Positions 3,113 to 25,466 of a DNA stretch of 64,000 bases are shown here, piece after piece. Where the stretch lies: the sequence record OM319461.1; one strand, written 5' to 3'. The position numbers and the translations under genes are program-made. The notes beneath the pieces were generated by a model. It worked only from the letters and a program-made list of their open reading frames with translations. It searched no databases and was not told the origin of the DNA. Within the stretch, counting starts at the first letter, position 1. Each line of letters begins with the position of its first letter.

Positions 3113-3157
3113 ANNATGTTCCTNNTGTGGTTTNAATACANNGTNGTTATATAGAGA

Positions 3158-3544
3158 TCACTTTGCGTTCATTGCATCNGCGATCNGNNTNAANANCTGG
3201 AANNCCNNNNNCATNANTNNCATNGGTGGGTAAAANCCNTAGCCATCNTCNNCNGGGAAGAAGTNNGTNTGNCNGTATTCNCCNACAGTNAANTTNCCNN
3301 NGNAGATCNCTTCNACTTCTGTTTGAGNNTGNANCATACGNGCATTCTGATCTNNNGTCATTNNTTTNGCTTCNNCATCNNANGGNGANGANTCAAANCN
3401 CAATNNNGNNAAGTNGAANNNNCCANNNTCNACNTNCGNGAAGTCGAACCANATNTCATGGTTGTGNTCATAAAATGTGAANGACGTGTGTTTCTTNGGN
3501 TCNAGTNTTTCTTTGTTNNNGAANNTNANTTCTGANCGNAGCAT
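3158..3544 (-). CDS. Hypothetical protein (128 aa, N-rich)
   Basis: Open frame, follows a terminator-like hairpin near 3575-3597; many ambiguous bases. Confidence 0.5.
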   Translation of the reverse strand: MXXSEXXFXNKEXXXXKKHTXFTFYXHNHXXWFDFXXXXXXXFXXXXLXFXXXXXDXEXKXMXXDQNXRMXXXQTEXEXIXXXXXTXXEYXXXXFFXXXDGXXFYPXMXXMXXXFQXXXXIXDAMNAK

Positions 3545-3603
3545 GNGNNATTNCTCNANTAAAAAATAAGNTAAGNGANGAGGGGTTTTACCCCCTCCTC
3601 NTT

Positions 3604-3795
3604 TTAGATTACCATNACTTCACTTGCNATGAAGTTGGCGATTGTTTGNACAGTNGGACTAGGTAAGTCAGCGATGTGNCGAATAGTACCAGGNTTNANN
3701 GTATCNTGGATACCGTANTGTGGCGCTAGTGTTTCGAANCCATCAGCTGTNGCATTATCNAGGATAAGCTCACCAGTCATCATGTCGCCNTCNAA
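3604..3795 (-). CDS. Non-virion RNAP beta' N-terminal subunit, exon 2 (phiKZ gp56.1-like)
   Basis: Begins TTN GAN GGC GAC ATG (F-D-G-D-M) immediately after a G at 3796, completing the NAD|FDGD active-site motif. Confidence 0.85.
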   Translation of the reverse strand, partial: XXGDMMTGELIXDNXTADXFETLAPXYGIXDXXXPGTIXHIADLPSXTXQTIANFXASEXMVI

Positions 3796-6555: not shown

Positions 6556-8493
6556 CTAGATGTAGATGTGACCAGGGATGTGGTTACCGAATTGGCTACC
6601 TGCTGCACCAACGTTTGCACGGAACACATTGTTAACTACGTTACCGTCAATTGCTTGACCGTAAACGAAGCCGCTTGCTAGCTGGCTGATGATTTGAGTA
6701 TCAACTAGACCACGTGGGTTCATGTTGATGCCCGCAACAGACATAGCAGCTGCCATGCGTGGACCTAGCTCAGGGTTGAAGAATACACGGATGTATAGAG
6801 TATCGAAGTTACCTTCAGCCGATGGCTCAAGAGCAACGATATCTTTACGACGACCGTCTAGACGTTCTAGACCTTGAGCACCGTCAGTTGCACCAGGGAT
6901 GAATGATTCAGAGAATGCATTCACTGGAGAATCGATTGATGCTGCTTGCTCTTTAGCTGCTGCTACTGCAAATAGCGTATCGATGTGACGGATGTCAGAT
7001 GGAGAACCATCAGGTAGGTTGTATTCACCACCGTGAACGATAACTGTGTTAGCTTGGACAACTTCTTTGTCTTTAGCTTGAGCCCACTGTTTAGAGAACT
7101 CACCGCCAGTCATTGCGTCGAACAGGTTGATCAATGCATCGTTAGCGCCAGATACACGTTTAGCCGCAGCTAGGAATAGCTGTTGAGTCCAAGATTCAGC
7201 AGTACCGATACCGATGTCCATTGCTAGTGTCATTGAGTTATGCACGAAGTATGCGTCACAGAATGCACGGAATGTAACAGAGTCAGTAGAAGAAGCTGCT
7301 TGAGTGTACTCAATCATTTTTGGCTTAGGAGTAAACTGAACACCAGCACCAGCGTATGGTTCGTATTGGTAACCTAGTACACCTAGATCACGAGAGATAG
7401 GACCACGCTTAGCAGGGTTAGCGAAGATTGATTCCCAGTTACGACCAGATGCCAACAGAGTTGTAGACATTAGACCGATTACTGGAGTTAGTGGGTTTTC
7501 GATAGTTACACGTGCACAAGACTCAGATGCATCAACACCTGTTAGTACTAGTAGCGCATGGTTTTCTGGACGAGCGCCATTGTGCATCATACCTGGTTGC
7601 ATTTGTGGCATGATGCCAGGAGTACGGATAGTATCGAACTTAACTGCTGTACGAGAAAGTAGAGCAGACATACCGTCGTCATGTGGGTCGAAGCTGTTGT
7701 TCTTACGCTCTGAAGCGCGAACTGTGATAACTGCGTCACATGCTGTTGCACGGCCATTGCTCATTACAACGTTTTGACCAGGCAGGATTTCTGTGTCAAC
7801 GTCAACTTGAACTTCTTGGCTCTTGAACAGAGACACGTCAACCAAGTTAGCAGGGTTTGCTTTAGACTTGATTGCGTTTGCTGCTAGGTTGTAGATGCGC
7901 TCAACGTTACCTTCTTCAAGGATTGGTTGGTTCTTACCTACAGCGTAGAAGTGTACAGGCACAACTGCTTCACCAGCTACTTGGAATTTCTCTGCTAGGA
8001 AAGCACGTACTTTACCGATGTAGCGTTCGTTCCAGCATTTAGATACTGGGAAGTCGATTGTGATTTTCTTACCGCCGCCTGCGAAGTTTTTGTTAACTAG
8101 CTCTTCGTGTTGACGCATTGGAGCGTAAAGAAGTGCTTCAGGTAGAAGTGCGTAGAAGAAAACACGAGACTGAACTTTCTTAGCGTATACCATGATAGGT
8201 AGAGCTAGATCAGCTGGCTTAGCGTGGAAGAACTTAACTGCGTCTGCGCTACCGTCGCCTTTTTGGATTTCTTCAGTCGCTTCTACGAACTTAGCGAATG
8301 TACCTTCACCTAGAGAAGATACTTGAGTGTGACCGAATGCTGCAAGCATAGACTTGAAGCCGCCAGTTTGTTGTGCAGTTTGTTGTGGTTGAGCTGCTGC
8401 TGGAGCTGCTTGAGTTTGCACTTGTGGCTGAGCTACTTCTACTTGAGTTTCAGCTGATTTGTTTTGTTGTGCGTTTGGTGCTACGAATGTCAT
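6556..8493 (-). CDS. chmA: Chimallin (phage nucleus shell protein)
   Basis: 645 aa with a disordered Q/A-rich N-terminus; diagnostic synteny (DNA pol - opposite-strand core gene - ChmA - nvRNAP beta'). Call rests on size and synteny, not on alignment. Confidence 0.8.
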   Translation of the reverse strand: MTFVAPNAQQNKSAETQVEVAQPQVQTQAAPAAAQPQQTAQQTGGFKSMLAAFGHTQVSSLGEGTFAKFVEATEEIQKGDGSADAVKFFHAKPADLALPIMVYAKKVQSRVFFYALLPEALLYAPMRQHEELVNKNFAGGGKKITIDFPVSKCWNERYIGKVRAFLAEKFQVAGEAVVPVHFYAVGKNQPILEEGNVERIYNLAANAIKSKANPANLVDVSLFKSQEVQVDVDTEILPGQNVVMSNGRATACDAVITVRASERKNNSFDPHDDGMSALLSRTAVKFDTIRTPGIMPQMQPGMMHNGARPENHALLVLTGVDASESCARVTIENPLTPVIGLMSTTLLASGRNWESIFANPAKRGPISRDLGVLGYQYEPYAGAGVQFTPKPKMIEYTQAASSTDSVTFRAFCDAYFVHNSMTLAMDIGIGTAESWTQQLFLAAAKRVSGANDALINLFDAMTGGEFSKQWAQAKDKEVVQANTVIVHGGEYNLPDGSPSDIRHIDTLFAVAAAKEQAASIDSPVNAFSESFIPGATDGAQGLERLDGRRKDIVALEPSAEGNFDTLYIRVFFNPELGPRMAAAMSVAGINMNPRGLVDTQIISQLASGFVYGQAIDGNVVNNVFRANVGAAGSQFGNHIPGHIYI

Positions 8494-8830: not shown

Positions 8831-9895
8831 ATGTACAGCCTCATTAACAAAGACATTACTCTATCTCGAGGTACAAAGGTCAATCCACATGTATCTCGAC
8901 TTGTGGCTCAACATAAGACAAACGTTGAGAAACAGATTGCATGGTATAAAGAGAACTACCAAGAAGTTAATGGGCGCAACCCACTTGTTCGTTTAGCTTA
9001 TGGTATTCTATCTTATCGTCAAGACAATGCGATGCTTGCCTATCAGACTGCAAAAACATTCATGCAGGAACTCATCAGCCCAATTGGCTTTACGTCAGAT
9101 GTACATGAAGGCAAAGTCCACTATGAGTTCTTCGGTGAAACACCTACGGCTATCCTTGCCCTGGATCGTTCCAATCCAGCTGAAGTATTCGTGTCGAGTA
9201 ACAACTATCAAACCTTACGTCCTGTAAAGGTAGTCCATGTTCCGAGTGCAAAGGATAATCTATTGCGTCCGGATCTTGCCGAGCACGAAACTGGCTTTGG
9301 TCTCATTACTGTCGATGTTCCATTGTTTGCAATGGGTCTTGCACAGTGGATGAAGCAAAACATGAAGAAGGACCCAGACAAGCGAGAAGGTGTTGAACAA
9401 TTCATTGGTCGTTGGGTATTGCCGAATGCAATGTATGGTCAAGCAGATAACTATCCCTTGGCTGTGCTAGAAGCAAAAACTTTTGAAGCGTGCGAAAGTA
9501 GCTCGAAACAAATGCTTCCTGATGTTGGCAAAGACTTCTTTAAATATCTGAACGAGTTTAAAGATGAACTAAATGCAGCAAACACAATAGAAGATGTTCT
9601 TAAGACTCTACCAGCTGTTTTCAAGAAGACTCAGTTCGATGCGATCTTATTTCCTCGTGGCTATGTTCCAAAGCAAAGTCACTGGGCAAGAAGTTCTGCA
9701 TTCCTGCGTCCATTAAAGATAGCAATGGAAATCGCAACAGATAACCAAGATGGACGAGCACTGAAGAATAAGTTCAAGCGCGAGCAGCGTCGCATGGACC
9801 AAGAGAAAACATATGACTCACTGGATGACACACTAATGTCAACCGAGTTATCTCTTTATCGCCTAGATATCCAATTCATGTTCGAAGCAATGTAA
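8831..9895 (+). CDS. Conserved Chimalliviridae core protein (phiKZ gp52-like)
   Basis: 354 aa, AGGAGG RBS, opposite strand between chmA and DNA polymerase as in phiKZ. Confidence 0.65.
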   Translation: MYSLINKDITLSRGTKVNPHVSRLVAQHKTNVEKQIAWYKENYQEVNGRNPLVRLAYGILSYRQDNAMLAYQTAKTFMQELISPIGFTSDVHEGKVHYEFFGETPTAILALDRSNPAEVFVSSNNYQTLRPVKVVHVPSAKDNLLRPDLAEHETGFGLITVDVPLFAMGLAQWMKQNMKKDPDKREGVEQFIGRWVLPNAMYGQADNYPLAVLEAKTFEACESSSKQMLPDVGKDFFKYLNEFKDELNAANTIEDVLKTLPAVFKKTQFDAILFPRGYVPKQSHWARSSAFLRPLKIAMEIATDNQDGRALKNKFKREQRRMDQEKTYDSLDDTLMSTELSLYRLDIQFMFEAM

Positions 9896-9939: not shown

Positions 9940-12111
9940 TTAAAGCTCTACAGGGAAGAACAATGCTTTCTCTGCTTCTTCTTTGCTGTACAAGTCAGAG
10001 TAGAAACGAGTATTGCGTTTGTTAAGTGAGTATAGACCGTAACATTCACAAGTGATGTAGAAAGCATCTGTCATCGTACGTAGGATTTTACGTTCATCGA
10101 TGATGCTTCTAAGTTCAGATGGAATCTTACCGTCTGCCAATAGCTCGACAGGTACCAACAAGTTAGTGTAACCTTTTGATGCCTTACCCCATTCCTCAGC
10201 ATGACGCATTAAAGCTTTGCCCATCGTATCGTCAAGTTTAGAAGCATACTCAAGTAGCTTTTCTTTCTTGTCGATAGTTACTGGGATTTTCACACACTGC
10301 ACAGGCAGCTGTTCAGCTTGACCATACTTAGGACCAAACACCGTATTCCATAGTTCGATCTTCTCGTAGTTAGAAGACTCAGGACGAGCATATGTTTCTT
10401 TTGTCTTAGCCTGCTCATAACGATAGAACGTAGCACCACCAGAACGAATGTCCTCGAGTACATCATGTTCAACCATCGCAATAGGAGCAATGATATTCAT
10501 CGGAGTCAGGTTATTACCCTTACCTATCTGATCCATAATGTTTAACTGGTAATCTTCCAGTACCTTACGGATTTTAGGTGGCAGCTTAGAGTTCTTAAGG
10601 TTTACGCCTTTGATCTCTGTTTTGTTCTTTCCGTATACTTGACCTTCACATGCAGAGATGATTGCCATGTAGTGTTTTGTACGCGTTGTTACTACCATCA
10701 CTGGGAAGTAGAACTCGTTCTTCATCGTACAACGGAAAAGCGCATTACGTTCTACACCTACCTGTGCACAAAGCATACCAAGGTTGTGTGCGATATTCTG
10801 AGAAGCAAAGTAAGTCGTGATTGCCGCTACAGATACCATCTCCGGTGTGTTAACCAAAGAGTTACAGAACCATTGACATTGATGCTGTGTCGTAAAGATA
10901 GACGAGTCAGTATCCGATGCTACCACACCGTCACGCAGCATACTAGGGAAGCTATGCAAGTGAGCAGGATAGTTAAGAGTAGTGATGAACGCCTTAACAA
11001 AGTCAGAGTATTCAGTAAAGATATGGTACACATGTTTCAGACGAGAAGCCATGAAGCAGTATAGCTCAGGTTCCTCTTTCATTACATTGCGTAGTTCTTT
11101 ACCTTTCATCTCTTTCGATGTCAACATACCAGCAAGTGCCAATAGGTCATCATCTGCCGACTTCATGAACTCAACCGAATCATCAAACGACATGATGTTT
11201 GATGGCTCTTGCATTAGACGTTCGTACATCTGACGCATGAACAGGTTGTTGTAAATCGTTAGTGCTTTGATATCACCACACATTGCGATGATTGCACGTT
11301 CAACCGGAGTAACACCTTCGATGAACTCACGTAGTGAAGCTTCTTCAGCTGCATCTTCCCAGTACTTACGAGTAGAGCGCAGAACTTGCTCGAACACTTC
11401 TTCAGCAGTAGGGATATGTAAGTCGTACTTAACGATGGCGTTGTTGACTAGAGCATAGTCAGTATTGCGGACAAGGTAAACCAAGTTCTCCATTGTAACT
11501 TTAGGGCTAAAGTAATGACGGTTAGACGCAAGCATCTTCTCGTTAATAGAGTTAGCCGTAGTCGTAATCGTACGACACAGTGACGTTAGTGTTGTGTGTG
11601 CACTAGCGTAGTACAATGGGTTATGTGGAGATGAAGTAGCACCAGAGATCGAGTTGTTACGGATTTTGTAGTTGGCCTGCAATAGGTCACAGAAATCTGC
11701 ATATACTTGGTCGCCGTTTTGTTTTGCTACCTGACCTGCCTTTTTAACCTTTTTACGCAAGCCCAAGTTAACGTCGATAAAATCAGCAACGAATGCTCGG
11801 TGGACTTCTGGGTTTGCATAGGCAATAAGGTTAGGTGCCAGAATATGTGAGTTGTTACTAACCCAATCAAGATAGCTCACGAGATCACCGCGAGACTTAA
11901 CACGGTCCTGCATAACTTTGCGACGGAGCATGTTCATTGTCGGTGACTTTGGTTTAAGCTCCAAACGTTCGACAATAGCTTCTGCCTTTTCTAGGGGCAT
12001 GTTTCGTTTCACAGACAGATACTTAGCCTGTGACTTCTTGTAGTTACCTACCAAGTCCAAATCACGCTGGTATGCGTCAAGTGGTAAAAAGAATGGGTTT
12101 TGGAAGGACAT
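9940..12111 (-). CDS. Family B DNA polymerase, catalytic part (phiKZ gp50-like)
   Basis: Motifs YKIRNNSISG (KxxxNS) and VASDTDSSIF; no exonuclease domain evident, consistent with the split phiKZ-type polymerase. Confidence 0.88.
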   Translation of the reverse strand: MSFQNPFFLPLDAYQRDLDLVGNYKKSQAKYLSVKRNMPLEKAEAIVERLELKPKSPTMNMLRRKVMQDRVKSRGDLVSYLDWVSNNSHILAPNLIAYANPEVHRAFVADFIDVNLGLRKKVKKAGQVAKQNGDQVYADFCDLLQANYKIRNNSISGATSSPHNPLYYASAHTTLTSLCRTITTTANSINEKMLASNRHYFSPKVTMENLVYLVRNTDYALVNNAIVKYDLHIPTAEEVFEQVLRSTRKYWEDAAEEASLREFIEGVTPVERAIIAMCGDIKALTIYNNLFMRQMYERLMQEPSNIMSFDDSVEFMKSADDDLLALAGMLTSKEMKGKELRNVMKEEPELYCFMASRLKHVYHIFTEYSDFVKAFITTLNYPAHLHSFPSMLRDGVVASDTDSSIFTTQHQCQWFCNSLVNTPEMVSVAAITTYFASQNIAHNLGMLCAQVGVERNALFRCTMKNEFYFPVMVVTTRTKHYMAIISACEGQVYGKNKTEIKGVNLKNSKLPPKIRKVLEDYQLNIMDQIGKGNNLTPMNIIAPIAMVEHDVLEDIRSGGATFYRYEQAKTKETYARPESSNYEKIELWNTVFGPKYGQAEQLPVQCVKIPVTIDKKEKLLEYASKLDDTMGKALMRHAEEWGKASKGYTNLLVPVELLADGKIPSELRSIIDERKILRTMTDAFYITCECYGLYSLNKRNTRFYSDLYSKEEAEKALFFPVEL

Positions 12112-15122: not shown

Positions 15123-16085
15123 CTAGTTTTTCTTTTTCTTAGATGCTTTTGGGGCAGATGAAGTATTAAGGAAGCCTACGATCGTTTCCTCTGATACTAC
15201 ATGGATCCCACGAGCTTGTGCGTTTGCTAATGACTGGCGATCTACCGGAGTCAGAGTTTCTAGACGACTGGCTACAATCAAATCCGTTTGGGCGGACAGA
15301 TGCGAGGTCGGGTTTGCCCCAAGTCCACGTAAAACAGATTTCATACCAGAATGATCGAACTCGTGTTCGCCAATCAAGTTAAAGCCGATAACACACACTT
15401 CACGATCTTTAAGGATGCGGGACGATACTTGAACCGGACTTGTGATGTAGGTATCCAGGTCAACATCAGTACCAAGATGATGTGGGCGGATGTAAAGACC
15501 ATCTTCGTCCAACTTCATCATTTCCCATTCGATGATTCGGAAGTCGCCTTCGTTCTTACAAACAAGTCGTCCTTCTTCATTCTCATGAGTAGTCCATAGA
15601 TCAGTACAAGGACGTCCAGTAAAGCCATAGACTTCATCGTAGATCTCGAGCGTGAGTTCACGGAAGAACAATTTGTATTTTACAATATGTTCACGCAGGC
15701 GGATTTTGTTCGCTTTGAGATTGTCCTGATGCTGTTGGTTCATCTCGCTTACTGTGATGCCAGATGGAGCATAGTACTCTTTAAACCATTCGTCACGGGT
15801 GATCTCAACGATTGCATCCAAAGCAGAATCCAGGAGATCTTCTGCCTTCAGTGTACTACACAGACCAGGGATACCAGCATTGAGTGCATTAACGAACGCA
15901 TCTTCATATGTGGTACGAACATAATCATAAATAAAGCGCACGTCCCAGTGGATGTTTTGAGCATCGGTGTACTCAGTAGGGACATGAGGGATTTTACCTA
16001 ATAGCTCAACGGCCTTAGCTCGCCAATCAATTGTTATTTCTTTGAATTGATCAACATGGTTGGTCGGTTTCTTTTGGTTAGTCAT
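15123..16085 (-). CDS. Protein with C-terminal BRCT domain
   Basis: C-terminal VCVIGF...LRGLGA...TDLIVA...AQARGIHVVSEE matches the BRCT pattern of NAD-dependent ligases; N-terminal 230 aa unassigned. Confidence 0.7.
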   Translation of the reverse strand: MTNQKKPTNHVDQFKEITIDWRAKAVELLGKIPHVPTEYTDAQNIHWDVRFIYDYVRTTYEDAFVNALNAGIPGLCSTLKAEDLLDSALDAIVEITRDEWFKEYYAPSGITVSEMNQQHQDNLKANKIRLREHIVKYKLFFRELTLEIYDEVYGFTGRPCTDLWTTHENEEGRLVCKNEGDFRIIEWEMMKLDEDGLYIRPHHLGTDVDLDTYITSPVQVSSRILKDREVCVIGFNLIGEHEFDHSGMKSVLRGLGANPTSHLSAQTDLIVASRLETLTPVDRQSLANAQARGIHVVSEETIVGFLNTSSAPKASKKKKN

Positions 16086-17792: not shown

Positions 17793-18074
17793 TTAGAGAC
17801 TGCAAGCTTTATCTCGGCATACACGCTTGATGTCATCGTCACTGATGCCTGGAACCAACTTATTACCCAGCCCATTGGATCGTCTTACTTGTGCGATCTG
17901 TTGAATCTTCTTCTCTGCTGCATCGGGTTGCCATTTATGGGTGGCCAATGAATGGAGTTTACCCAGCGTTGAAGTTTTCTCAGATTCACACTCTCGTAAA
18001 ACTGACTTTCTTTCCATAGAAATTATGAGCCAGCTAAAGCCGATTAAAGCTGCGAATAGTATCGGTGTACCCAT
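17793..18074 (-). CDS. Membrane-anchored hypothetical protein
   Basis: N-terminal hydrophobic helix ILFAALIGFSWLIIS; GAGGTAGG RBS. Confidence 0.7.
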   Translation of the reverse strand: MGTPILFAALIGFSWLIISMERKSVLRECESEKTSTLGKLHSLATHKWQPDAAEKKIQQIAQVRRSNGLGNKLVPGISDDDIKRVCRDKACSL

Positions 18075-18164
18075 ACTTCGCCTACCTCTTATTAACTAAT
18101 ACGATTGAAGGAGTAACTTTAATTAACTAAAATTATACCCATAGGATTCGCTGTCATGAATGAA

Positions 18165-18285
18165 AAGAAAAAAAAAATAAACTATAACCTCCCACCCCGA
18201 AGGGCAGGAGGAATAGCAAGAGAGAACCTGAATGAATCCAGGTGTCCAATCCCGACCAAAGAATTGGATGCGTCACTTAACCATA
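18165..18285 (-). ncRNA. Candidate small RNA, array unit 5 (about 120 nt)
   Basis: ACCTAATCTTATG at 18294-18282; two hairpins (TCCAAT/ATTGGA, CCTG/CAGG); C/U-rich linker; terminator 18211-18188 plus long U-run. Confidence 0.6.
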
Positions 18286-18302
18286 AGATTAGGTGACCGA
18301 AT

Positions 18303-18595
18303 AAAAAATAAGATAAGGGGGTAGGGGCAACACCCCTACCACCATCGATGTTTAGGGACCAACTCATCCCGAGTCAATCCGTAACGATACAAACGTTATG
18401 AAATTTAAAAAAGCAGTAACTATTAAGCATTGTGCTTGTGGACCCTAAGGAAAGTCCGAAGGTAGGACAACACGAGAATGTCATCACAACTCACTTAACC
18501 CATGGTAACAGGACATGACCATTTAGAAGTAAGTCAGCTTTATTGAGGTTAATCATTAAAAGCTTAAGTTCAACAACAAAGGTTTCTTTGCTATA
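18303..18595 (-). ncRNA. Candidate small RNA, array unit 4 (about 290 nt, may be two RNAs)
   Basis: TAATCATATAG at 18601-18591; terminator GGTAGGGG/CCCCTACC 18340-18320 plus U-run; no ORF. Confidence 0.5.
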
Positions 18596-18613
18596 TGATT
18601 ACACTAGGCGGTT

Positions 18614-18785
18614 AAAAAGAAATTCACCCTCCCACCAAAGGCAGGAGGGTAGCTCTAGGAATCATTATGTCTAATATCAGAAAGCCACCACCACGATCAG
18701 AGGAGTGAACAGTTTTCCAAACGATGACGTGCCTAACCAATTAGGCAAGCAGAAAAAGCAGAAAGAGATCAACACTTTTACTATA
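18614..18785 (-). ncRNA. Candidate small RNA, array unit 3 (about 170 nt)
   Basis: ACCTAATAGTATA at 18794-18782; GCCTAA/TTAGGC hairpin; CACTCCTCT; terminator 18650-18626 plus U-run. Confidence 0.6.
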
Positions 18786-18804
18786 CTATTAGGTAGAAAC
18801 AAAC

Positions 18805-19117
18805 AAAAAGAATAATTAGCTTCCCCGCCATAGGCAGGGAGGCTTCACACTCTTAACGGTTTCGTTGCAGATCATAAGGTAAACTGCAATGGGTCAATCT
18901 CATGCAGATGACTTTAGAAGGCAGCCTCCCAACCATAGGAAAGGAGGCATCACAACTAAAACAATCTAAATTGGAGGCTTCACTCAAACAATTACCAAAC
19001 AGGTAAGAAATTAGAGAGACTATCATGCGACAAAGGTACAGGATACCAATGAACAATGAAAATGACTTAAGGAGATTCATCAACACTTAGGAGAGTAATT
19101 AATGTACTGAAGTCATA
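18805..19117 (-). ncRNA. Candidate small RNA, array unit 2 (about 310 nt)
   Basis: ACCCAATAGTATG at 19126-19114; multiple CTCC motifs; three GTGA(A/T)GCCTCC repeats; terminator 18843-18819 plus U-run. Confidence 0.6.
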
Positions 19118-19149
19118 CTATTGGGTGTGGTTGTTTTTTTTTAACGACA

Positions 19150-19270
19150 AAAGAAAAATACCTACCCCCTCCCGTTTGGGAGAGGGATGGTAGTTCAGAG
19201 GAGATAGACAACACAGAGACTACTCGCCAGTCTACTGCATTCACGCCGTCGTCATAACATGATTGTCTAC
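19150..19270 (-). ncRNA. Candidate small RNA, array unit 1 (about 120 nt)
   Basis: ACCCAATTGTGTAG variant at 19280-19267; closing stem TAGACAA/TTGTCTA; TCTCCTCT; terminator 19193-19161 plus U-run. Confidence 0.5.
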
Positions 19271-19379
19271 ACAATTGGGTATAATCCTTTTGAACTTTCT
19301 TCAGGTCTTATGGGGACAGGCTTCAGCACCATCTGATCAAAAATAACCAGTTGATTAAATTATTTGACACGAGCTTATT

Positions 19380-20600
19380 ATATCTTTTACTTATATCTTT
19401 AGATATAATTAGGAAAAAGATATTAATAACAGATTAAAAGAATATAAAGAGAGGTCCATTTACTTTATCTAAAGATAAAGATAAATATAATAACGCGCGA
19501 GAGCGCGTGGTTATTTTTCTCATAAAAATGATTTTTGAAGATTTCTCCCGTGAGGGAGGAATCATGATTATTTATATCTTTCGTAGATTCTAAGGATTCT
19601 AGGGATTGAATCATTTTGAACATCTCATGGGTATTATGTAGTAGAATCTCGTGATGTGTAACTTCATCTTAGTAAAACTAGATACAATATCATAATCTAA
19701 CTTAACTAACATGAATTTATAACATATCATAATTTTATTGCACTATGTGGTAAGGTTATTCTTATTCTACGACACAATATATTAAGATCTTTTGAATTTT
19801 ACTATGAGCCTTTAAATCTTAACAAAGTTTCTATTTTGTTTGCTTCTCTTAAAGGACTTAGTTAAAACTTGTGTGAGTTAATTCAATCATTAACTCCTTA
19901 GAGCTCCTGTATGGTTCTCTAAGACAATTATCCATTTCTATCTGATGCATCAATCAGATACAATAAGTTAAACTTCCTCATGGGTTATGTGGAAGCTAGT
20001 CGAACTTATATAGCTAAGTGATAACTTTCACAGAAGTTATCGGTATCAGATAAACTCATCTGATCCAGAACAACTCAATACTACCGAATTAACATTAAAA
20101 AATTCCCCAGTATCCAGAGTTATCCACATCGATGTATCCACCTCTCCCCTTAACGGGGGAGGGAGTGGGTATATCTCCGTCTACGAGCAAATAGCATATC
20201 CCTATACACGAAAATCACCAGATTTCACATAGAGACAAAAATAATAATATCTCCAGCTCTTTCGAGCCAGATGAAAAAAAAAATCGAAAATTTTTATATT
20301 AGCTTGTGGTTGTTGCTTATATCTTCTTCCCTATGCTTCTCTATCGATGATAGTCTAATGACATAGCTAGCTACTAGTTCTCATCTATCTTACATCTAGA
20401 TGAATCCTATCTATCTCTGTCTAGTCTTTCTATCTCTATCTCCCTATTATCTCTTTCTAAGATATACGCAAAAAACCCCCTCCCAGACGGTTCCCCCTTT
20501 CGAAAACTAAATCATTAGATTTAACTGTTTTTTATGATTTATAATTGAGAGAAAGAAAAAAAAAGAATAAGTACAGGAGAGAGGATAACCCCCTCTCCAT
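19380..20600. other. AT-rich ORF-free region, candidate replication origin
   Basis: No ORF of 60 aa or more; many TATCT/AGATA repeats, palindromes (19489-19515, 20140-20170), homopolymer tracts, one perfect TTATCCACA. Confidence 0.45.
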
Positions 20601-20604
20601 AGTC

Positions 20605-20955
20605 TTACAAGGCCAGATGTATAGATTCCTCAGGTAGATCATCGAATAGCTTACGATAACCTCGATTCAGATACCATCTACGAAAGTATCGATTCTCATC
20701 TAGGTTACGTGCAGCAGCTAACGAGTAGACAAACATCGTCCAGTCAGATAGCTTACCCTGTTTAGCATAGTCGATTAGCATCTCTGAGTCGACAAGCTCA
20801 CGATGGAACTCGGTAAACTCAGCCAGTAGCTTACTGTCGTAAGTATCGATACCTTTGTCATATGCAGTCCATCCGAAGATGATTGCTATTAGGCTACCCA
20901 ATACTGTTAGATCTAGATTGGTTAAAACATGTAGAGGATCAAAGAACATCTCCAT
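20605..20955 (-). CDS. Membrane-anchored hypothetical protein
   Basis: Hydrophobic LTVLGSLIAIIFGWTAY; GGAG RBS. Confidence 0.7.
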   Translation of the reverse strand: MEMFFDPLHVLTNLDLTVLGSLIAIIFGWTAYDKGIDTYDSKLLAEFTEFHRELVDSEMLIDYAKQGKLSDWTMFVYSLAAARNLDENRYFRRWYLNRGYRKLFDDLPEESIHLAL

Positions 20956-21289
20956 TGTCTACTCCTGGTACGTTAGTTAGTTTGTTGAATTCACGTGAGA
21001 AGATCCGTACGGCTATCTGAGGGGATTTCATCTCACGAGGTATGAGGTTGTCAGGGTACTGATCTAAAAACTGCTTATGGAGCTTTAGAGCGCATTCTCG
21101 ACCATGTGAATAAGCATCGTTACGATGACTAGCGTCAGCTAGATCACGAATAAGATCTACGAACTCGTGATTCCATCGAAGGATAAGACGACGCTGTCTC
21201 TCAGTCAAGAAGCGAACATAAATAAGGTCACCGAAGATACCGGTGAACATAAGAACTAAGATTGCGATGTCGAACATGTTAAACTCCAA
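20939..21289 (-). CDS. Membrane-anchored hypothetical protein (paralogue of 21279..21584)
   Basis: N-terminal TM helix; motif LHKQFLDQYPDN. Confidence 0.7.
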   Translation of the reverse strand: MEFNMFDIAILVLMFTGIFGDLIYVRFLTERQRRLILRWNHEFVDLIRDLADASHRNDAYSHGRECALKLHKQFLDQYPDNLIPREMKSPQIAVRIFSREFNKLTNVPGVDNGDVL

Positions 21290-21584
21290 AGTAATGTTCT
21301 TGACGTTTGTCTATAAACTTGCTGAAGCTGAAGTTACGTACAAACGGGTTATTAGGATACTGATTGAGGAACGAAAGATGAATTGTCCTAGCAGCCTCTG
21401 CTGCGGCTTTTGGGTCATCTGTCTTGATGGCGTACTCGCGATAAGCCTGACTCATGCGTTGGACCATGTAGACACTTTCACCATTGCATGAATCAGATTG
21501 TACTTGTGGCCAGATCTTTATTCCGCACCAAACAGCAAGAATGATGAGGGTCCCTATTGCGGTGGTAGCAAGAATAACTTCCAT
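21279..21584 (-). CDS. Membrane-anchored hypothetical protein (paralogue of 20939..21289)
   Basis: N-terminal TM helix; motif IHLSFLNQYPNN. Confidence 0.7.
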   Translation of the reverse strand: MEVILATTAIGTLIILAVWCGIKIWPQVQSDSCNGESVYMVQRMSQAYREYAIKTDDPKAAAEAARTIHLSFLNQYPNNPFVRNFSFSKFIDKRQEHYFGV

Positions 21585-21719
21585 CAGTTCTTCTCCACGG
21601 TTTTGGCATTATGGTCAACTACCCAGCATGAGGCACAAGAGCCACACGTGAAGATTTCCTTGTCTCCCGCATCCATCGAGTCCGTTAACTTGGCTGTGCA
21701 GTTAGGACACTTGTTCCTT

Positions 21720-22346
21720 TTAATCAGCTGATAAGCAGCTTGCATCATTTGTACTATAGACATGGTGTTTCTCCCAGTGGTATTTTAGTGGAAAGGCATC
21801 GTCCGACAGAGGGATAGAAACCACGATTAGGTTTTCCTCTACTGGCACAGATGCCGAATAACGGTTTGTTGGATTACCATCGCCTTCTTCGGCAATGGCT
21901 TTGGTATAGTTGTGCAGTAGACATGATACGGCATCGGTATCAATATCTTGTTCCATTGCCTCTGTGATCTCTTTGTCGAGCACAGCAAAGTAACGACATT
22001 GGATCTCTGGGATGTCAAGTGCATCCATCACATCAAATGAGCCTTCCTGGTTTAACCGTAGACGACTCATGTTAGAGCAATTGGTTTTTACTAGCTTAGC
22101 GCTGTAATAACGATACCCAGTCCAGCGAAGAAAATCTTCCTCTTCGTTTTCCGGACGACCGGTCACAAGATATTTCACTAGTGGACCGATATGGTGGACG
22201 ACGAGATAAAGCGGAGTATCCGACTTACGACGCGCGAGTAATTGGAGTAGAAACGAAACAGCCTCTTCCTCATGGTAGAAAGTAGCTTCTAGGTTTGTAT
22301 TGAAGTGTAGGCCAGTAGGCATTGTTTTGAATGTAATGTCTTCCAT
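21720..22346 (-). CDS. Hypothetical protein (208 aa)
   Basis: AAGGA RBS; first gene after the early motif at 22388. Confidence 0.7.
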   Translation of the reverse strand: MEDITFKTMPTGLHFNTNLEATFYHEEEAVSFLLQLLARRKSDTPLYLVVHHIGPLVKYLVTGRPENEEEDFLRWTGYRYYSAKLVKTNCSNMSRLRLNQEGSFDVMDALDIPEIQCRYFAVLDKEITEAMEQDIDTDAVSCLLHNYTKAIAEEGDGNPTNRYSASVPVEENLIVVSIPLSDDAFPLKYHWEKHHVYSTNDASCLSAD

Positions 22347-22387
22347 TGGTTTATTCCTTTTTGGTTTTAATGCATCAATCTACATTG

Positions 22388-22397
22388 GTAATATAGA
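22388..22397 (-). promoter_or_regulatory. Early promoter motif TCTATATTAC
   Basis: Exact repeat of the motif upstream of a minus-strand operon. Confidence 0.7.
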
Positions 22398-22438
22398 GCT
22401 GATCCTCCAATGAAAAAAAAAACAACCATACCTAATAG

Positions 22439-22691
22439 TATGCACAACTCTGCCTGAACGATTACGTTTCGTGTGGAACTCCAAATGAAAGTGTGCATTG
22501 AATGTGAGTCATAGAGCTACACCGTAGGACTATGCATGCCGAGCTGCTTAATCGAATCACATCGACCCTGGGACTTTACCCCAGTAAGTTGACGTGTGTA
22601 GGTTTTGACCTCGCTCGTTGAATTGCCCGAGAGGGCAGGTAGGTACGGACGGCCCTTGTGGGTCGTCCGTGCTCTATACCTCTATTTTTTA
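22439..22691 (+). ncRNA. Structured RNA upstream of TROVE gene (Y RNA or leader candidate, about 250 nt)
   Basis: Starts at the TATG of ACCTAATAGTATG; stems ATGCACA/TGTGCAT, CACATCGAC/GTTGACGTGTG, GAGA-tetraloop hairpin 22623-22637; strong terminal hairpin 22642-22673 plus U-run. Confidence 0.65.
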
Positions 22692-22704
22692 TTGAGGACT
22701 TGTT

Positions 22705-24255
22705 ATGAACAAAAATAAAATCACCCAGACTCTTTTCGAAAGCGAAGTAGAATTAAGTACTTTGCTGGATTCCCTTAAGGAACGCAATGTGATCAGTCTC
22801 GAGACTACACTTAAGCGCATTCTATTGACGGGCACGAATGGTCATGTGGCATCTATCGATTGTGGCGATCAAGTTTATTCCGACGTAGCCTTCAATGGTT
22901 ATGAAGAACAGATCAAGCAACGTGGTAGAGAGATCACTAGTTTTGTTACATCCCAATCATATCCTTTTACAAAAGAAACAAAAGCAAATCGATTATTCGT
23001 CTTGGCAAAAATCGCCGGTAACACAGACGACTTCGAAGCGAGTAGTTATGCATTGAATACAGCAGTTGATCTCTGTATGGATGCTGAAGACATACTTCGC
23101 TTTGCATGTTTCATTTCATACTATCGTGGCTTTGGCCGCATGGTTAAGAAAGTACTTAGCCGTTGGTACCTTGAACGAGATCCTCGTGACTTGTTGTGTG
23201 AGGTATTGGCATGTAAGAAGGTAACGGTACAGTTCGATGAAAAACCGATATCATTTAGCCACCGTAATCTTGTACGTCGTTTGTTTCTGCGTGGCAGTGA
23301 TGACTTACAAGACGCATGTCTGCGAATTATCAAAGGATACCGTGGAGACGCCTCAGAGATCCCTCAGCGCTTCTTGACCCTACAAGAGGTGTTAGGCCTT
23401 AACTTATGTACTAAAGGCTCTGTGGAGACCGCTGCGAAGATCATAGAAGGATTACCTTTTGATCATACCGTATATCCGAAGAAGTTCTTGTACTACACGG
23501 AAATAATGAGTGCTTTGTTTTATGGCAAGCATGTCACTCCTGAGAAGTTCCTTGACTTCGTGAAGATTGATCCGACATTCGAATTCTTAGATGACCGATT
23601 GGCAGATCGCTTTATTCATATTGTCGGCGGATGGCTTCGTGACCAACGCATCACTCCAGTAGATCTTTTAATCTATCGTGAGCTACTCGATGCTGATCGT
23701 TTCAAAGAGACACGTAGACTATTGCTTCGTCGCTATGAAGAAGTCGAGTATCCAGAACGTGGTGTGGAAAACAATGTAGTATTCCTTTACCTCAACTGGG
23801 ATCAGATCAACCGAGAAGTTGTTGCTAATGCACTTGATCGTGCCAAGTCACTTCGCTGTATGTTGGTCATCGTTGGTGAGGGTACATTTGTATTGGATCC
23901 TAAGGACGTAACCCTGGATGCATTATGTAAGCACCTGTCAGTTGTTGAAAAGGATCATGTCATAATGCCTTCTATGTCGTTTATTCAGATTCTGATGACA
24001 CAGCCGGTTGCCTATGACAACGTAGTTATCTATGAGCATCGTCCTGTAGTTAAGTCAGACCATTATCGTAAAGGCTTCCTAGACGCCCTGGATACGTATT
24101 TGACTGGTCGTAACCCATTGACCAAGATAATCCACCAAACGGCCGTAGAGGACGCTACAGTGATTCTGGATGAACCACGACATGCTGGTCTACTCACAGT
24201 AAAAGGACTAGGTACACTACAAACTAAGATTGTAGATATCTTCCTTGGAAAATAA
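22705..24255 (+). CDS. Divergent Ro60/Rsr-like TROVE-domain protein
   Basis: RGFGRMVKKVLSRWYLERDPRDLL...FSHRNLVRR resembles the TROVE GxGR...WY...SHRDLLRL signature; alpha/beta C-terminal domain in the vWA position but lacks DxSxS. Confidence 0.7.
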   Translation: MNKNKITQTLFESEVELSTLLDSLKERNVISLETTLKRILLTGTNGHVASIDCGDQVYSDVAFNGYEEQIKQRGREITSFVTSQSYPFTKETKANRLFVLAKIAGNTDDFEASSYALNTAVDLCMDAEDILRFACFISYYRGFGRMVKKVLSRWYLERDPRDLLCEVLACKKVTVQFDEKPISFSHRNLVRRLFLRGSDDLQDACLRIIKGYRGDASEIPQRFLTLQEVLGLNLCTKGSVETAAKIIEGLPFDHTVYPKKFLYYTEIMSALFYGKHVTPEKFLDFVKIDPTFEFLDDRLADRFIHIVGGWLRDQRITPVDLLIYRELLDADRFKETRRLLLRRYEEVEYPERGVENNVVFLYLNWDQINREVVANALDRAKSLRCMLVIVGEGTFVLDPKDVTLDALCKHLSVVEKDHVIMPSMSFIQILMTQPVAYDNVVIYEHRPVVKSDHYRKGFLDALDTYLTGRNPLTKIIHQTAVEDATVILDEPRHAGLLTVKGLGTLQTKIVDIFLGK

Positions 24256-24264
24256 ACCAAATAG

Positions 24265-24368
24265 TATGGCTTTTTAAAAAGCTTCGGGACAGAGTAAGTG
24301 AGGGCTTACTGGTTCTTCTATTTGGTTAAGATACTATTTCTTCCCGCCCTTCGGGGTGGGTATTTTTT
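24265..24368 (+). ncRNA. Candidate small RNA downstream of TROVE gene (about 100 nt)
   Basis: ACCAAATAGTATG at 24256-24268; hairpins GCTTTT/AAAAGC and AGTAAG/CTTACT; UUCG terminator 24343-24360 plus U-run. Confidence 0.5.
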
Positions 24369-24431
24369 TTTTCGCCAAACAAAAAAAAAGAATAAAAGAT
24401 AAGCCTACTCCCCGAAGGGAGTAGGGCTTTA

Positions 24432-25466
24432 TTAGAACTCGATCTCGTCGAAGTTGATGTCGTTTTGTAACGGTGTTTGTTGCTGCGGCGCTTCTTGATG
24501 TTGAGGCTGTTGCTGCTGCGGTGCAGAATTGAACTCATCAGTTTGCTGCTGTGGCTGTTGCGCTGGAGCTTGGCTTTGACCTGAGTTTACAGATGGAATA
24601 GCCGCTGGCGGAACATAAGCAATACTTTCACGAATAGAGAATGGACCAGCTGAGATAACTGCGCCACGGAAACCATCGCGTGATTGCTCATTGATTTCTT
24701 TCATTACTTGGAATTCTTTCGGTGCTAGACAGCGCTTCATGAATTCAGGTAAGTTGTCGTACTCGGCAACCATGTTAACTTCATTGTTCTTGACTTTAAC
24801 TTTGCCTTTCTTAACAAGACCGTATTGACGACCATCTAGATCCATACCAAAGTCATGCGAGTACGTACGGAAACCGTAGTCTACAAAATCATCTGGTAGA
24901 GCAGAGTATGCCATAAACATTAGGAAGTCAATGCTTACTTTTGACAAGCGGTTAGCAGGACCATCAGGAACTAGCTCGGCCATGAACTTGTTAGCTGGTT
25001 TTACTTCCATGCCGTTGTAGGCATTAAGAATACGGCGGTGTTTGTCGATCACGTAACGTGTGTAACAAGGAATGTGACGGAAGTCTGTCTCTTCGCTGTT
25101 ATGGATCCACATGATAGGTGAACTGTACTTAGCGTGATAGAAGTTACTTTCGTAGTTCGTATCAAACTTTTCTAGACGTGGGAATTCCGGATGAGTGTGG
25201 TGAATACCAAACTGCATTGTGTTGTACATTGCTGCTACTGGAATCGGTAGAGGTGTACGACTTGGATCGCCATCTAGAACAATCGTTTCTTTAGAAACTT
25301 CAGTACCGCGTGTACCGTAGTCACGTAGAGCTGCTTTGTTTTCGTGTTTGCATGCTGCTTCGATAAGAGGGTGAAGTTCATGCTCGCGTGCTAGTTGAGG
25401 ACGAGGTTTAGGTTGAAAGCCACCACCACCGCCTCCGCGGCGACCGCCACGATATCCATAGGACAT
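24432..25466 (-). CDS. Putative nucleic-acid-binding protein with RGG N-terminus and SSB-like acidic tail
   Basis: MSYGYRGGRRGGGGGG start, P/Q-rich linker, ends NDINFDEIEF; own terminator 24404-24425. Confidence 0.6.
   Translation of the reverse strand: MSYGYRGGRRGGGGGGFQPKPRPQLAREHELHPLIEAACKHENKAALRDYGTRGTEVSKETIVLDGDPSRTPLPIPVAAMYNTMQFGIHHTHPEFPRLEKFDTNYESNFYHAKYSSPIMWIHNSEETDFRHIPCYTRYVIDKHRRILNAYNGMEVKPANKFMAELVPDGPANRLSKVSIDFLMFMAYSALPDDFVDYGFRTYSHDFGMDLDGRQYGLVKKGKVKVKNNEVNMVAEYDNLPEFMKRCLAPKEFQVMKEINEQSRDGFRGAVISAGPFSIRESIAYVPPAAIPSVNSGQSQAPAQQPQQQTDEFNSAPQQQQPQHQEAPQQQTPLQNDINFDEIEF

What the first reader, a model, noticed from the sequence alone, without database searches (positions are those of the whole stretch)
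22705..24255. Ro60/TROVE-like RNA-binding ring protein in a nucleus-forming phage
TROVE signature segments are recognisable, but the C-terminal domain lacks the vWA MIDAS DxSxS, so it is a divergent version. Established: bacterial Rsr binds Y RNAs, partners with PNPase, and is often linked to RtcB RNA repair. Inference: the phage may encode its own RNP for RNA quality control, tRNA-repair support or evasion of RNA-targeting defences, which still reach mRNA exported from the phage nucleus.
Basis: partly seen in the sequence, partly recalled or inferred. Interest (0 to 1): 0.72.

Follow-up and report, generated by a model that had tools for sequence, protein, structure and literature searches.

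The report
Divergent phage Ro60 with flanking RNAs
A giant Vibrio phage that builds a nucleus-like shell encodes a real but strongly diverged copy of the Ro60 RNA-binding ring protein; the protein had already been reported in a sister phage, and what is new is that it has lost its metal site and is flanked by conserved small structured RNAs unlike the usual Y RNA partners.

Summary
Window 22705-24255 (+) is an intact 516-aa ORF of Vibrio phage C-ZP2022 and a true, very divergent Ro60/Rsr homologue. Pfam TROVE misses it. A profile of its clade retrieves canonical TROVE+Ro60-vWA proteins, matches them at hhalign E=1e-28 over residues 29-512, and two AlphaFold models hit only Ro60/Rsr structures first.

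All five MIDAS ligands are lost across the clade, and so are the counterparts of Ro60 K170, R174 and H187. The phage encodes a chimallin homologue, so "nucleus-forming" has genomic support.

The identification is not new: GenBank calls it "TROVE containing domain protein", and Misol et al. 2020 reported the 89%-identical vB_pir03 ORF as Ro60-related.

New here:
- In the related phage BONAISHI the syntenic gene is a canonical, MIDAS-bearing Ro60 preceded by two YrlA-like RNAs.
- In the divergent clade that slot holds a conserved, strongly structured ~250-nt promoter-to-terminator RNA (22443-22693) with no YrlA features.
- A conserved ~100-nt unit follows the stop codon.

Best reading: a co-diverged phage Ro60-RNA particle, by analogy with Thermus phage phiLo Ro60-Yrl-PNPase. 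RNA binding and function are inferred, not shown. No RtcB link was found.

The parts
22387..22397 (+). Promoter-like motif P1 (GGTAATATAGA). It is the first half of a module found before every + strand unit in these phages.
   Evidence: 5 matches in the window against 0.97 expected. Same position in all related loci. A promoter role is inferred, not shown.
22434..22442 (+). Second promoter/5'-end-like motif (AATAGTATG), at a fixed 43-46 nt after P1.
   Evidence: Fixed spacing in all 8 loci and in BONAISHI. Function is inferred.
22443..22693 (+). Conserved, strongly structured non-coding RNA between the promoter module and the RBS; a candidate partner RNA or leader. Sub-elements:
- conserved block at 22506-22517
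- invariant helix GAGC (within 22539-22546) : GCUC (within 22609-22619)
- small GC hairpin 22623-22638
- long terminator-type hairpin 22638-22680
- U-tract 22681-22693
   Evidence: Fold z-score -4.3 here and -5.2 in L003, with 0 shuffles as stable. Covarying pairs. 88% identity between C-ZP2022 and vB_pir03 against 68% at third codon positions. Single copy. No Rfam match. Coordinates.
22694..22699 (+). Ribosome-binding site (GAGGAC), 5 nt before the ATG.
   Evidence: Read from the sequence. GGAG-type at the same place in the orthologues.
22705..24255 (+). Ro60/Rsr-like gene, 516 aa, intact (CZP2022_224).
   Evidence: dN/dS 0.107 against vB_pir03.
22753..23742 (+). Alpha-helical repeat (TROVE/HEAT-like) region, residues 17-346, with a clade-specific beta-hairpin insertion at residues 172-185.
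   Evidence: Secondary structure of both AF2 models. hhalign alignment.
23773..24204 (+). vWA-like alpha/beta domain, residues 357-500, without any MIDAS ligand.
   Evidence: Generic vWA domains follow the Ro60 hits in Foldseek.
24260..24372 (+). Conserved downstream small unit, about 100 nt: a block-2-like motif (24260-24268) right after the stop codon, a small covarying hairpin, a TGGTTAA segment, then an intrinsic-terminator hairpin (24343-24360) and T-run. It is either a second candidate small RNA or the 3' UTR.
   Evidence: Same layout in all 8 divergent-clade loci. Terminator scan. Fold z-score only -2.1. BONAISHI has only 35 nt here.
24404..24425 (.). Hairpin that serves as terminator of the convergent - strand gene (24432..25466). 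It marks the 3' border of the locus.
   Evidence: covarying stem.
6556..8493 (-). Context: chimallin (phage-nucleus shell) homologue, 645 aa, annotated only as hypothetical.
   Evidence: Pfam PF25677 Chimallin_Phikzvirus, 31.9 bits (gathering score 27), residues 9-514 against model positions 5-507 of 627.

Best explanation
The ORF encodes a functional, highly diverged orthologue of the Ro60/Rsr ring protein: an alpha-helical TROVE ring closed by a vWA-like domain. It has been inherited vertically at a fixed genomic position in a clade of Vibrio chimalliviruses.

The ancestral state, kept in BONAISHI, was a canonical MIDAS-bearing Ro60 whose gene is preceded by two tRNA-like YrlA-type Y RNAs under the same promoter module. 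In the C-ZP2022 / vB_pir03 / sm033 / metagenomic sub-clade both partners changed together:
- The protein lost the MIDAS metal site and the counterparts of Ro60 K170, R174 and H187.
- The YrlA RNAs were replaced by a different structured RNA of about 250 nt, made from the same promoter module and ended by a terminator-type hairpin. The protein can therefore be translated only from read-through transcripts.
- A second unit of about 100 nt follows the gene.

Most likely the protein binds one or both of these RNAs to form a phage-specific ribonucleoprotein in the host cytoplasm. By analogy with D. radiodurans/Salmonella Rsr-Y RNA-PNPase and with Thermus phage phiLo Ro60-Yrl, that particle would engage host RNA-decay machinery such as PNPase and modulate RNA turnover during infection.

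Shown: homology, fold, loss of MIDAS, purifying selection, synteny, conservation and structure of the flanking RNAs, and YrlA at the orthologous site in BONAISHI.
Inferred: transcription of the RNAs as discrete species, protein-RNA binding, and the PNPase or host target.
For: Homology and fold:
- Clade profile: 238 hits, and 36/38 sampled hits are TROVE+vWA_Ro60.
- hhalign E=1.1e-28 over residues 29-512.
- AF2 pLDDT 86.5, pTM 0.85. The clade-only model has pLDDT 82.1.
- Foldseek top 13 hits are all Ro60/Rsr, with 2nvo at TM 0.69/0.72 and 0.58/0.60 for the two models.

Functionality: dN/dS 0.107 at dS 0.71. The gene is intact in 8 syntenic loci.

Ancestral state: the BONAISHI protein passes Pfam TROVE and vWA_Ro60 and matches Rsr at E=3e-55. 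Two same-strand YrlA matches lie upstream, at 59.3 and 35.8 bits, behind the same P1/block-2 module.

Upstream RNA:
- Fold z-scores -4.3 and -5.2, with covarying stems.
- More conserved than synonymous sites.
- The neighbouring upstream gene is divergent, so the terminator-type hairpin can only end a transcript started at this locus.
- L009 has two tandem promoter-to-terminator units.

Downstream unit: conserved in 8 loci.

Precedent: phiLo Ro60 binds two Yrl RNAs encoded upstream of its gene and attenuates host PNPase (PMC12135203). Y RNAs lie within 4 kb on the same strand as Ro60 in 254 bacteria and 22 phages (PMC4201824).
Against: No experiment shows that these RNAs accumulate or bind the protein.

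The upstream RNA fails every sequence criterion of YrlA/Y RNA:
- No Rfam hit even at E<=10 on the isolated region.
- No T-loop module and no GNCGAAN0-1G motif.
- No tRNA-like call by ARAGORN.
- At about 250 nt it is about twice the usual Y RNA size.

The counterpart of H187, whose mutation abolishes Y RNA binding in mouse Ro60 (PMC11277228), is Phe in C-ZP2022. The K170 and R174 counterparts are Ala and Val. Canonical Y RNA recognition is therefore unlikely to be retained.

Only about 4-5 independent RNA sequences exist, so covariation has little statistical power, and most of it sits in terminator hairpins. The covariance model of the core does not detect the upstream RNAs of L009, L010 or BONAISHI. 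Both BONAISHI YrlA matches are below Rfam's gathering score of 69. No phage-encoded PNPase, RtcB or ligase partner was found nearby.
Confidence: 0.6

Rival explanations
1. The upstream structured element is a cis-acting leader, not a trans-acting partner RNA. The terminator-type hairpin just before the RBS would work as a transcription attenuator or translational operator that sets, or lets the Ro60-like protein itself feed back on, expression of the ORF. The downstream unit would simply be the 3' UTR and terminator. The protein would then act on other RNAs, phage or host.
For: The hairpin and U-tract end 12-25 nt before the RBS in all loci, and no promoter-like motif lies between them and the ATG. 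The invariant, non-covarying GAGC/GCUC blocks look like a protein- or factor-recognition site. The element does not resemble any Y RNA. The downstream unit folds only modestly better than shuffles, z = -2.1.
Against: The positionally orthologous region of BONAISHI contains bona fide Y-RNA-like genes. L009 has two tandem promoter-to-terminator units, which is typical of small RNA genes rather than one attenuator. The downstream unit begins with its own copy of the block-2 motif, conserved in all 8 loci. The two readings do not exclude each other: a terminated leader can be both.
Confidence: 0.25
2. The protein is a neofunctionalised Ro60 derivative that no longer works as a Y-RNA-bound RNA chaperone. 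It would use the ring/vWA scaffold for something else, for example protein-protein interaction at or in the phage nucleus. The flanking RNAs would be ordinary UTRs.
For: It has lost MIDAS and the K170, R174 and H187 counterparts. A clade-specific beta-hairpin is inserted at residues 172-185. New clade-invariant motifs appear, such as DDLQDAC and EPRH. It escapes both the Pfam and NCBIfam family models.
Against: The basic RGFGR..KK..WY helix and the S-H-R block are retained. The ring and vWA architecture are kept in both models. MIDAS has no established role in RNA binding by Ro60 (PMC12135203). The flanking non-coding DNA is more constrained than synonymous sites, which ordinary UTRs rarely are.
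Confidence: 0.13
3. The TROVE resemblance is spurious: a helical-repeat protein matching by composition, named by annotation transfer only.
For: Single-sequence searches are negative or marginal. Pfam gives no hit, NCBIfam Rsr gives E=0.012, and PDB phmmer gives none. The GenBank name was copied from vB_pir03.
Against: hhalign E=1.1e-28 is co-linear over about 480 residues. 36/38 profile hits are canonical Ro60. The model built without any canonical sequence still hits only Ro60/Rsr at E about 1e-12. The syntenic BONAISHI gene is a canonical Ro60.
Confidence: 0.02

Closest known systems
Thermus phage phiLo Ro60 (phiRo60) with Yrl1/Yrl2 (Hu et al. 2025, NAR, PMC12135203; PDB 9KOP, 9L5Y)
   Same: A phage-encoded Ro60 ring protein with candidate partner RNAs in the non-coding region directly upstream of its gene, on the same strand. 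Foldseek match E=2.5e-7, TM about 0.5-0.6.
   Different: phiLo Ro60 keeps a metal-binding MIDAS site, with Ca2+ bound by D322, S324, T391 and D416. Its Yrl RNAs carry the CGAA motif in a 5'/3' stem. Here MIDAS is absent, the RNA has no such motif, and the host phage is a chimallin-encoding jumbo phage. Binding to RNA and PNPase is demonstrated for phiLo and untested here.
Vibrio phage BONAISHI ORF49c 'RNA binding protein' with two upstream YrlA-like RNAs
   Same: Syntenic orthologue in the nearest recognised chimallivirus. It has the same promoter module and the same order: non-coding RNA region, then the Ro60 gene.
   Different: BONAISHI's protein is canonical. It passes Pfam TROVE (53 bits) and vWA_Ro60 (89 bits), has all five MIDAS ligands, and has K-Y..R and H-P. 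Its RNAs match Rfam YrlA. It shares 22% identity with the C-ZP2022 protein. It has no downstream unit, with only a 35-nt gap.
Bacterial Rsr (D. radiodurans 2NVO; Salmonella Rsr) with Y RNA/YrlA and PNPase (RYPER)
   Same: Best structural match, 2nvo at TM 0.69/0.72. Same domain order and length. A non-coding RNA is encoded next to the gene on the same strand (PMC4201824).
   Different: About 15% identity. Scores 14 bits against the NCBIfam Rsr cut-off of 900. No MIDAS, no tRNA-like Y RNA, no rtcBA operon context.
Vibrio phage vB_pir03 ORF 64 (QNI21009, 'TROVE containing domain protein'; Misol et al. 2020, PMC7765460)
   Same: 89% identical orthologue in the same position. It was already described as a structural homologue of Ro60-related proteins.
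   Different: The paper did not note the loss of MIDAS or the flanking RNAs. Its annotation places three tiny ORFs over the structured leader.

Membership tests
Ro60/Rsr (TROVE + vWA ring proteins) | Sequence homology to the TROVE domain and the Ro60-type vWA domain over the full length | tested here: met
   hhalign 99.8%, E=1.1e-28, residues 29-512 against positions 36-530. 36/38 profile hits carry PF05731 + PF25045.
Ro60/Rsr (TROVE + vWA ring proteins) | Passes the curated family models (Pfam TROVE PF05731, vWA_Ro60 PF25045, NCBIfam Rsr NF041674) | tested here: not met
   No Pfam hit at E<=10. NCBIfam Rsr gives 14 bits against a cut-off of 900. The same holds for P0003-P0008 and sm033.
Ro60/Rsr (TROVE + vWA ring proteins) | Helical-repeat ring closed by a vWA domain (fold) | tested here: met
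   This rests on predicted structures only. Foldseek's top 13 PDB hits are all Ro60/Rsr for both models. The size of the central cavity could not be measured with these tools.
Ro60/Rsr (TROVE + vWA ring proteins) | MIDAS motif DxSxS...T...D in the vWA domain | tested here: not met
   All five positions are replaced in all 8 divergent-clade proteins. BONAISHI keeps them.
Ro60/Rsr (TROVE + vWA ring proteins) | Residues tied to Y RNA binding (H187; also K170 and R174, whose role I cite from my own knowledge of Stein 2005 and Fuchs 2006, which are not held in the library) | tested here: not met
   By hhalign and MAFFT, H187 corresponds to F194, K170 to A167 and R174 to V/P. Numbering was read from the human chain. 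The H187S phenotype is from PMC11277228. Alignment at 15% identity leaves some uncertainty.
Ro60/Rsr (TROVE + vWA ring proteins) | Binds Y RNA and/or misfolded RNA | not testable with these tools
   Needs binding or co-purification data.
Y RNA / YrlA (Rfam RF02553, RF00019), for the upstream RNA 22443-22693 | Encoded on the same strand within 4 kb of the Ro60 gene | tested here: met
   It lies directly upstream on the + strand. The criterion is from PMC4201824.
Y RNA / YrlA (Rfam RF02553, RF00019), for the upstream RNA 22443-22693 | Match to the Rfam covariance models | tested here: not met
   No YrlA or Y_RNA match at E<=10 on the isolated region. None in the window at gathering score or at E<=5. 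None in L009, L010 or L013. The positive control, BONAISHI, gave 59.3 and 35.8 bits.
Y RNA / YrlA (Rfam RF02553, RF00019), for the upstream RNA 22443-22693 | tRNA-like module (T and D arms) | tested here: not met
   No GTTCRA T-loop in any divergent-clade core leader. ARAGORN finds nothing.
Y RNA / YrlA (Rfam RF02553, RF00019), for the upstream RNA 22443-22693 | GNCGAAN0-1G motif in the Ro60-binding stem | tested here: not met
   Absent from all divergent-clade leaders and present once in BONAISHI's region.
Y RNA / YrlA (Rfam RF02553, RF00019), for the upstream RNA 22443-22693 | 80-130 nt, with a long stem formed by the 5' and 3' ends around a large internal loop | tested here: inconclusive
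   The upstream RNA is about 190-250 nt and folds as a series of hairpins plus one conserved long-range GAGC:GCUC helix. The downstream unit is about 100 nt but folds as three hairpins. The transcript ends are unknown.
Chimalliviridae (nucleus-forming jumbo phages) | Chimallin (ChmA) shell protein | tested here: met
   Window 6556-8493 (-): PF25677 at 31.9 bits against a gathering score of 27.
Chimalliviridae (nucleus-forming jumbo phages) | Split multisubunit RNA polymerases and a divergent family-B DNA polymerase | tested here: met
   divDNApol PF20286 at E=4e-191, window 9940-12111. The multisubunit RNAP genes are reported for vB_pir03 (PMC7765460) and were not re-tested here, as they lie outside the window.
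Chimalliviridae (nucleus-forming jumbo phages) | PhuZ tubulin (not obligatory in the family) | tested here: inconclusive
   The syntenic 322-aa gene of L009 has weak Tubulin/TubZ_C_2 hits. The window's own 320-aa ORF (15123-16085) has no Pfam or PHROG hit.
Chimalliviridae (nucleus-forming jumbo phages) | A phage nucleus seen in infected cells | not testable with these tools
   It has been shown for other Vibrio chimalliviruses (PMC10587174), not for C-ZP2022.

The most novel reading that the evidence does not exclude
The C-ZP2022 clade may represent a co-evolved swap of both halves of a Ro60 ribonucleoprotein. The Ro60 would have discarded its metal site and its canonical Y-RNA-contact residues. 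It would be paired with a new class of Y-like RNA that has no tRNA mimicry and is recognised through the invariant GAGC/GCUC-flanked helix. Nucleus-forming phages would use this particle in the cytoplasm to shield or sort their exported transcripts from host exoribonucleases or RNA-targeting defence.
Probability: 0.3. Interest if true: 0.65.

Novelty: new variant of a known kind. Interest (0 to 1): 0.45.

Why it matters
Ro60-Y RNA particles are conserved from bacteria to humans, where Ro60 is a major lupus and Sjogren autoantigen. How the protein and its RNA partner co-evolve, and what the MIDAS site is for, remain open questions.

This phage lineage offers a natural before-and-after pair in the same genomic slot. 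BONAISHI has a canonical Ro60 with tRNA-like YrlA RNAs. The C-ZP2022 clade has a MIDAS-less Ro60 with a different structured RNA. Comparing the two could show which protein surfaces and RNA features are really needed for particle formation.

It would also be the first look at a Ro60 system in phages that separate transcription (inside a protein shell) from translation and RNA decay (in the cytoplasm).

The basic observation, a TROVE protein in this phage group, is already in the databases and the literature, so the gain is incremental unless RNA binding is demonstrated.

Tried and rejected
- Single-sequence searches (Pfam, PHROGs, PDB phmmer) were negative or marginal. Only profiles worked.
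- Searches for more relatives in IMG/VR and JGI metagenome contigs found none. The RNA analysis therefore rests on about 4-5 independent sequences. L008 proved to be essentially sm033.
- Rfam scans of the window, the isolated leader and the intermediate loci found no Y RNA.
- I first took the two upstream conserved blocks (GGTAATATAGA and AATAGTATG) for parts of the RNA. They are general promoter-type modules of all + strand units, so I rejected that reading.
- I first equated Ro60 H187 with the S-H-R histidine (H186). Counting along the human chain showed that H187 is the His of LRLxHP, which aligns to F194, so I corrected this.
- A covariance model of the RNA core found no paralogue and no relative in L009, L010 or BONAISHI. 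Its marginal hit before the DNA polymerase gene is only the terminator of the preceding co-directional gene.
- Neighbouring genes gave no functional hint.
- The RtcB or tRNA-repair link was rejected for lack of any such gene reported in vB_pir03.
- Two papers I wanted were not held: Stein 2005 and Sim 2020.

The motifs I searched came from tool output or from a paper.
Full report
**1. What is there**

The window is Vibrio phage C-ZP2022 (OM319461.1, 287,943 bp, host V. parahaemolyticus). Window coordinate = record coordinate minus 186,000. An intact 516-aa ORF lies exactly at 22705..24255 on the + strand. It is a lone + strand gene between - strand genes. GenBank already names it "TROVE containing domain protein", a name transferred from the 89%-identical vB_pir03 protein.

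**2. Is it really Ro60/TROVE?**

Single-sequence tests are negative or marginal:
- Pfam TROVE gives no hit.
- PHROGs gives none.
- PDB phmmer gives none.
- NCBIfam Rsr gives 14 bits, E=0.012, against a cut-off of 900.

The family is tiny. A word-indexed search of 5.8 billion proteins found five members. A profile of those five hit *Xenopus* Ro60 as its only PDB match, at E=0.045.

The exhaustive profile search of 1.84 billion representatives settled the question. It gave 238 proteins at E<=1e-3, and 36 of 38 sampled distant hits carry Pfam TROVE plus vWA_Ro60. Profile-profile comparison with those canonical proteins gives 99.8% probability and E=1.1e-28, co-linear over residues 29-512.

An AlphaFold2 model (pLDDT 86.5, pTM 0.85) hits only Ro60/Rsr structures in its top 13. 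These include *D. radiodurans* Rsr 2nvo (TM 0.69/0.72), human Ro60 9nen (0.66/0.68), *Xenopus* Ro60 and Thermus phage phiLo Ro60. Generic vWA domains follow.

That alignment contained canonical Ro60s, so I re-predicted from the divergent clade alone (8 sequences; pLDDT 82.1, pTM 0.57). The same 13 Ro60/Rsr hits came back at E about 1e-12.

The gene is under purifying selection, with dN/dS 0.107 at dS 0.71 against vB_pir03.

**3. What is unusual in the protein**

A column-by-column comparison gives these results:
- Every member of the divergent clade has lost all five MIDAS ligands (DxSxS...T...D). The clade is C-ZP2022, vB_pir03, three metagenomic proteins, sm033 and the two bridge proteins P0007 and P0008.
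- The canonical K-Y-x-x-R is lost. These are K170 and R174 in human numbering, counted.
- The His of LRLxHP is lost. This is H187, whose mutation abolishes Y RNA binding according to PMC11277228. It is Phe194 in C-ZP2022.
- A beta-hairpin is inserted at residues 172-185.
- Retained: R38, G43, the basic RGFGR..KK..WY helix (141-155), the S-H-R block (185-187) and G501.

**4. Phage context**

The window encodes a chimallin homologue at 6556-8493 (-), above Pfam's gathering score, and a divergent family-B polymerase. vB_pir03 has multisubunit RNAPs and is closest to BONAISHI. BONAISHI is placed in Chimalliviridae. "Nucleus-forming" is thus supported genomically but has not been observed for this phage.

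No tRNA, RtcB or RNA ligase is reported for vB_pir03. The conserved neighbours have no recognisable function.

**5. Distribution and synteny**

All relatives sit in the same slot of syntenic jumbo-phage genomes: DNA polymerase ... DUF7484 ... this gene ... 405-aa gene ... terminase. tblastn against 50,697 phage records adds vB_VpaM_sm033 (36% identity) and BONAISHI ORF49c (22% identity), both syntenic. None was found in IMG/VR or JGI metagenome contigs.

**6. The key comparison**

BONAISHI's protein is a canonical Ro60. It passes Pfam TROVE (53 bits) and vWA_Ro60 (89 bits), matches Rsr at E=3e-55, and has all MIDAS ligands.

Its 765-nt upstream gap contains two same-strand matches to Rfam YrlA. 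They score 59.3 bits (E=8e-13) and 35.8 bits (E=5e-6). Both are full-length with T and D arms, and both are below the gathering score of 69. They lie behind the same promoter-type module as in C-ZP2022. This matches the published rule that Y RNAs lie within 4 kb on the same strand as Ro60 (PMC4201824).

**7. The flanking RNAs in C-ZP2022**

Upstream of the ORF lie 358 non-coding nucleotides. Two conserved blocks there are general modules found before every + strand unit: GGTAATATAGA at 22387, and AATAGTATG at 22434, always 43-46 nt apart. For other genes the ATG follows within about 60-100 nt of the first block.

Here an extra element of about 250 nt intervenes (22443-22693). The evidence that it is a selected, structured RNA:
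- It folds far better than shuffles: z = -4.3 here and -5.2 in L003.
- It keeps an invariant GAGC:GCUC helix around a variable hairpin, then a small GC hairpin whose sequence differs completely between loci.
- It ends in a long terminator-type hairpin with six double-sided compensatory pairs, followed by a U-tract.
- It is 88% identical between C-ZP2022 and vB_pir03, against 68% at third codon positions.

The upstream gene is divergent, so this terminator can only end a transcript started at this locus. By contrast, the hairpin before the polymerase gene is just the previous gene's terminator. L009 has two tandem promoter-to-terminator units.

The element is single-copy. It matches no Rfam family. 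It lacks the T-loop and the GNCGAAN0-1G motif. A covariance model of it finds nothing in L009, L010 or BONAISHI. Those intermediate loci also lack YrlA.

Downstream, right after the stop codon, lies another block-2 copy (24260-24268). A covarying hairpin, a TGGTTAA segment and a terminator (24343-24360) follow it. All eight divergent-clade loci have this layout, and BONAISHI lacks it.

**8. Interpretation**

The best reading (confidence 0.6) is a co-diverged phage Ro60-RNA particle. Protein and partner RNA changed together after the split from the BONAISHI lineage. The particle probably acts on host RNA decay, as shown for phiLo Ro60-Yrl-PNPase (PMC12135203).

Rivals:
- The upstream element is a cis-acting attenuator or operator (0.25). 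This does not exclude the best reading.
- The protein is neofunctionalised and no longer an RNA chaperone (0.13).
- The resemblance is spurious (0.02; effectively refuted).

Transcription, RNA binding and target are all inferred.

**9. Novelty**

The identification is already in GenBank and in Misol et al. 2020. TROVE proteins in some jumbo phages are noted by Iyer et al. 2021. A phage Ro60-Yrl RNP has been characterised by Hu et al. 2025.

Not previously described, as far as the held literature shows:
- the complete loss of MIDAS and of the Y-RNA-contact residues in this clade;
- the YrlA pair in BONAISHI;
- the conserved non-YrlA RNAs flanking the divergent gene.

I therefore rate it a new variant of a known kind, of moderate interest.

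Noticed in passing
window 18100-20620: A 2.5-kb stretch almost free of credible genes, with many terminator-like hairpins, mostly on the - strand: 20 in 17800-24800 against 4.0 expected. Block-2-like motifs lie on the - strand at 18783 and 19115, which suggests a row of small transcription units. vB_pir03 annotates 16 tiny ORFs there. Only short islands are conserved in the distant loci.
   Followed up: partly
window 8562, 8770, 16436, 22388, 26651, 41186, 63693 (+ strand): A bipartite promoter-like module, GTWATATAGA-N13-TTGA, followed about 44 nt later by AATAnTAT(G/A). It precedes every + strand unit and is conserved at the same sites in all related loci. It is probably a phage-RNAP promoter class, but that is not established.
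   Followed up: partly
L012 (BONAISHI MH595538) 4452-4571 and 4654-4765, + strand in the locus: Two tandem, unannotated YrlA-like (Y RNA-like, tRNA-mimic) RNAs directly upstream of ORF49c 'RNA binding protein', which is a canonical Ro60. They score 35.8 and 59.3 bits, both below Rfam's gathering score of 69.
   Followed up: yes
window 6556-8493 (-): A chimallin (phage nucleus shell) homologue, annotated only as 'hypothetical protein' in C-ZP2022. Pfam PF25677 gives 31.9 bits against a gathering score of 27.
   Followed up: yes
window 2653-5254: 465 N characters are scattered singly through this stretch of the window. The cause (masking or the deposit itself) was not examined.
   Followed up: no
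L002 (vB_pir03) 8915-9224: Three tiny annotated 'hypothetical protein' ORFs (30-36 aa) lie over the structured leader and are almost certainly spurious calls. C-ZP2022 annotates nothing there.
   Followed up: partly
L008 (Logan ERR12141278 contig, sm033-like): The Ro60-like orthologue is called as two ORFs (165 and 344 aa), i.e. one break. I did not examine whether this is real or an assembly error.
   Followed up: no
window 15123-16085 (-): A 320-aa ORF syntenic with an L009 gene that has weak Tubulin/TubZ hits, so it is a possible PhuZ. The window's own ORF gives no Pfam or PHROG hit.
   Followed up: partly
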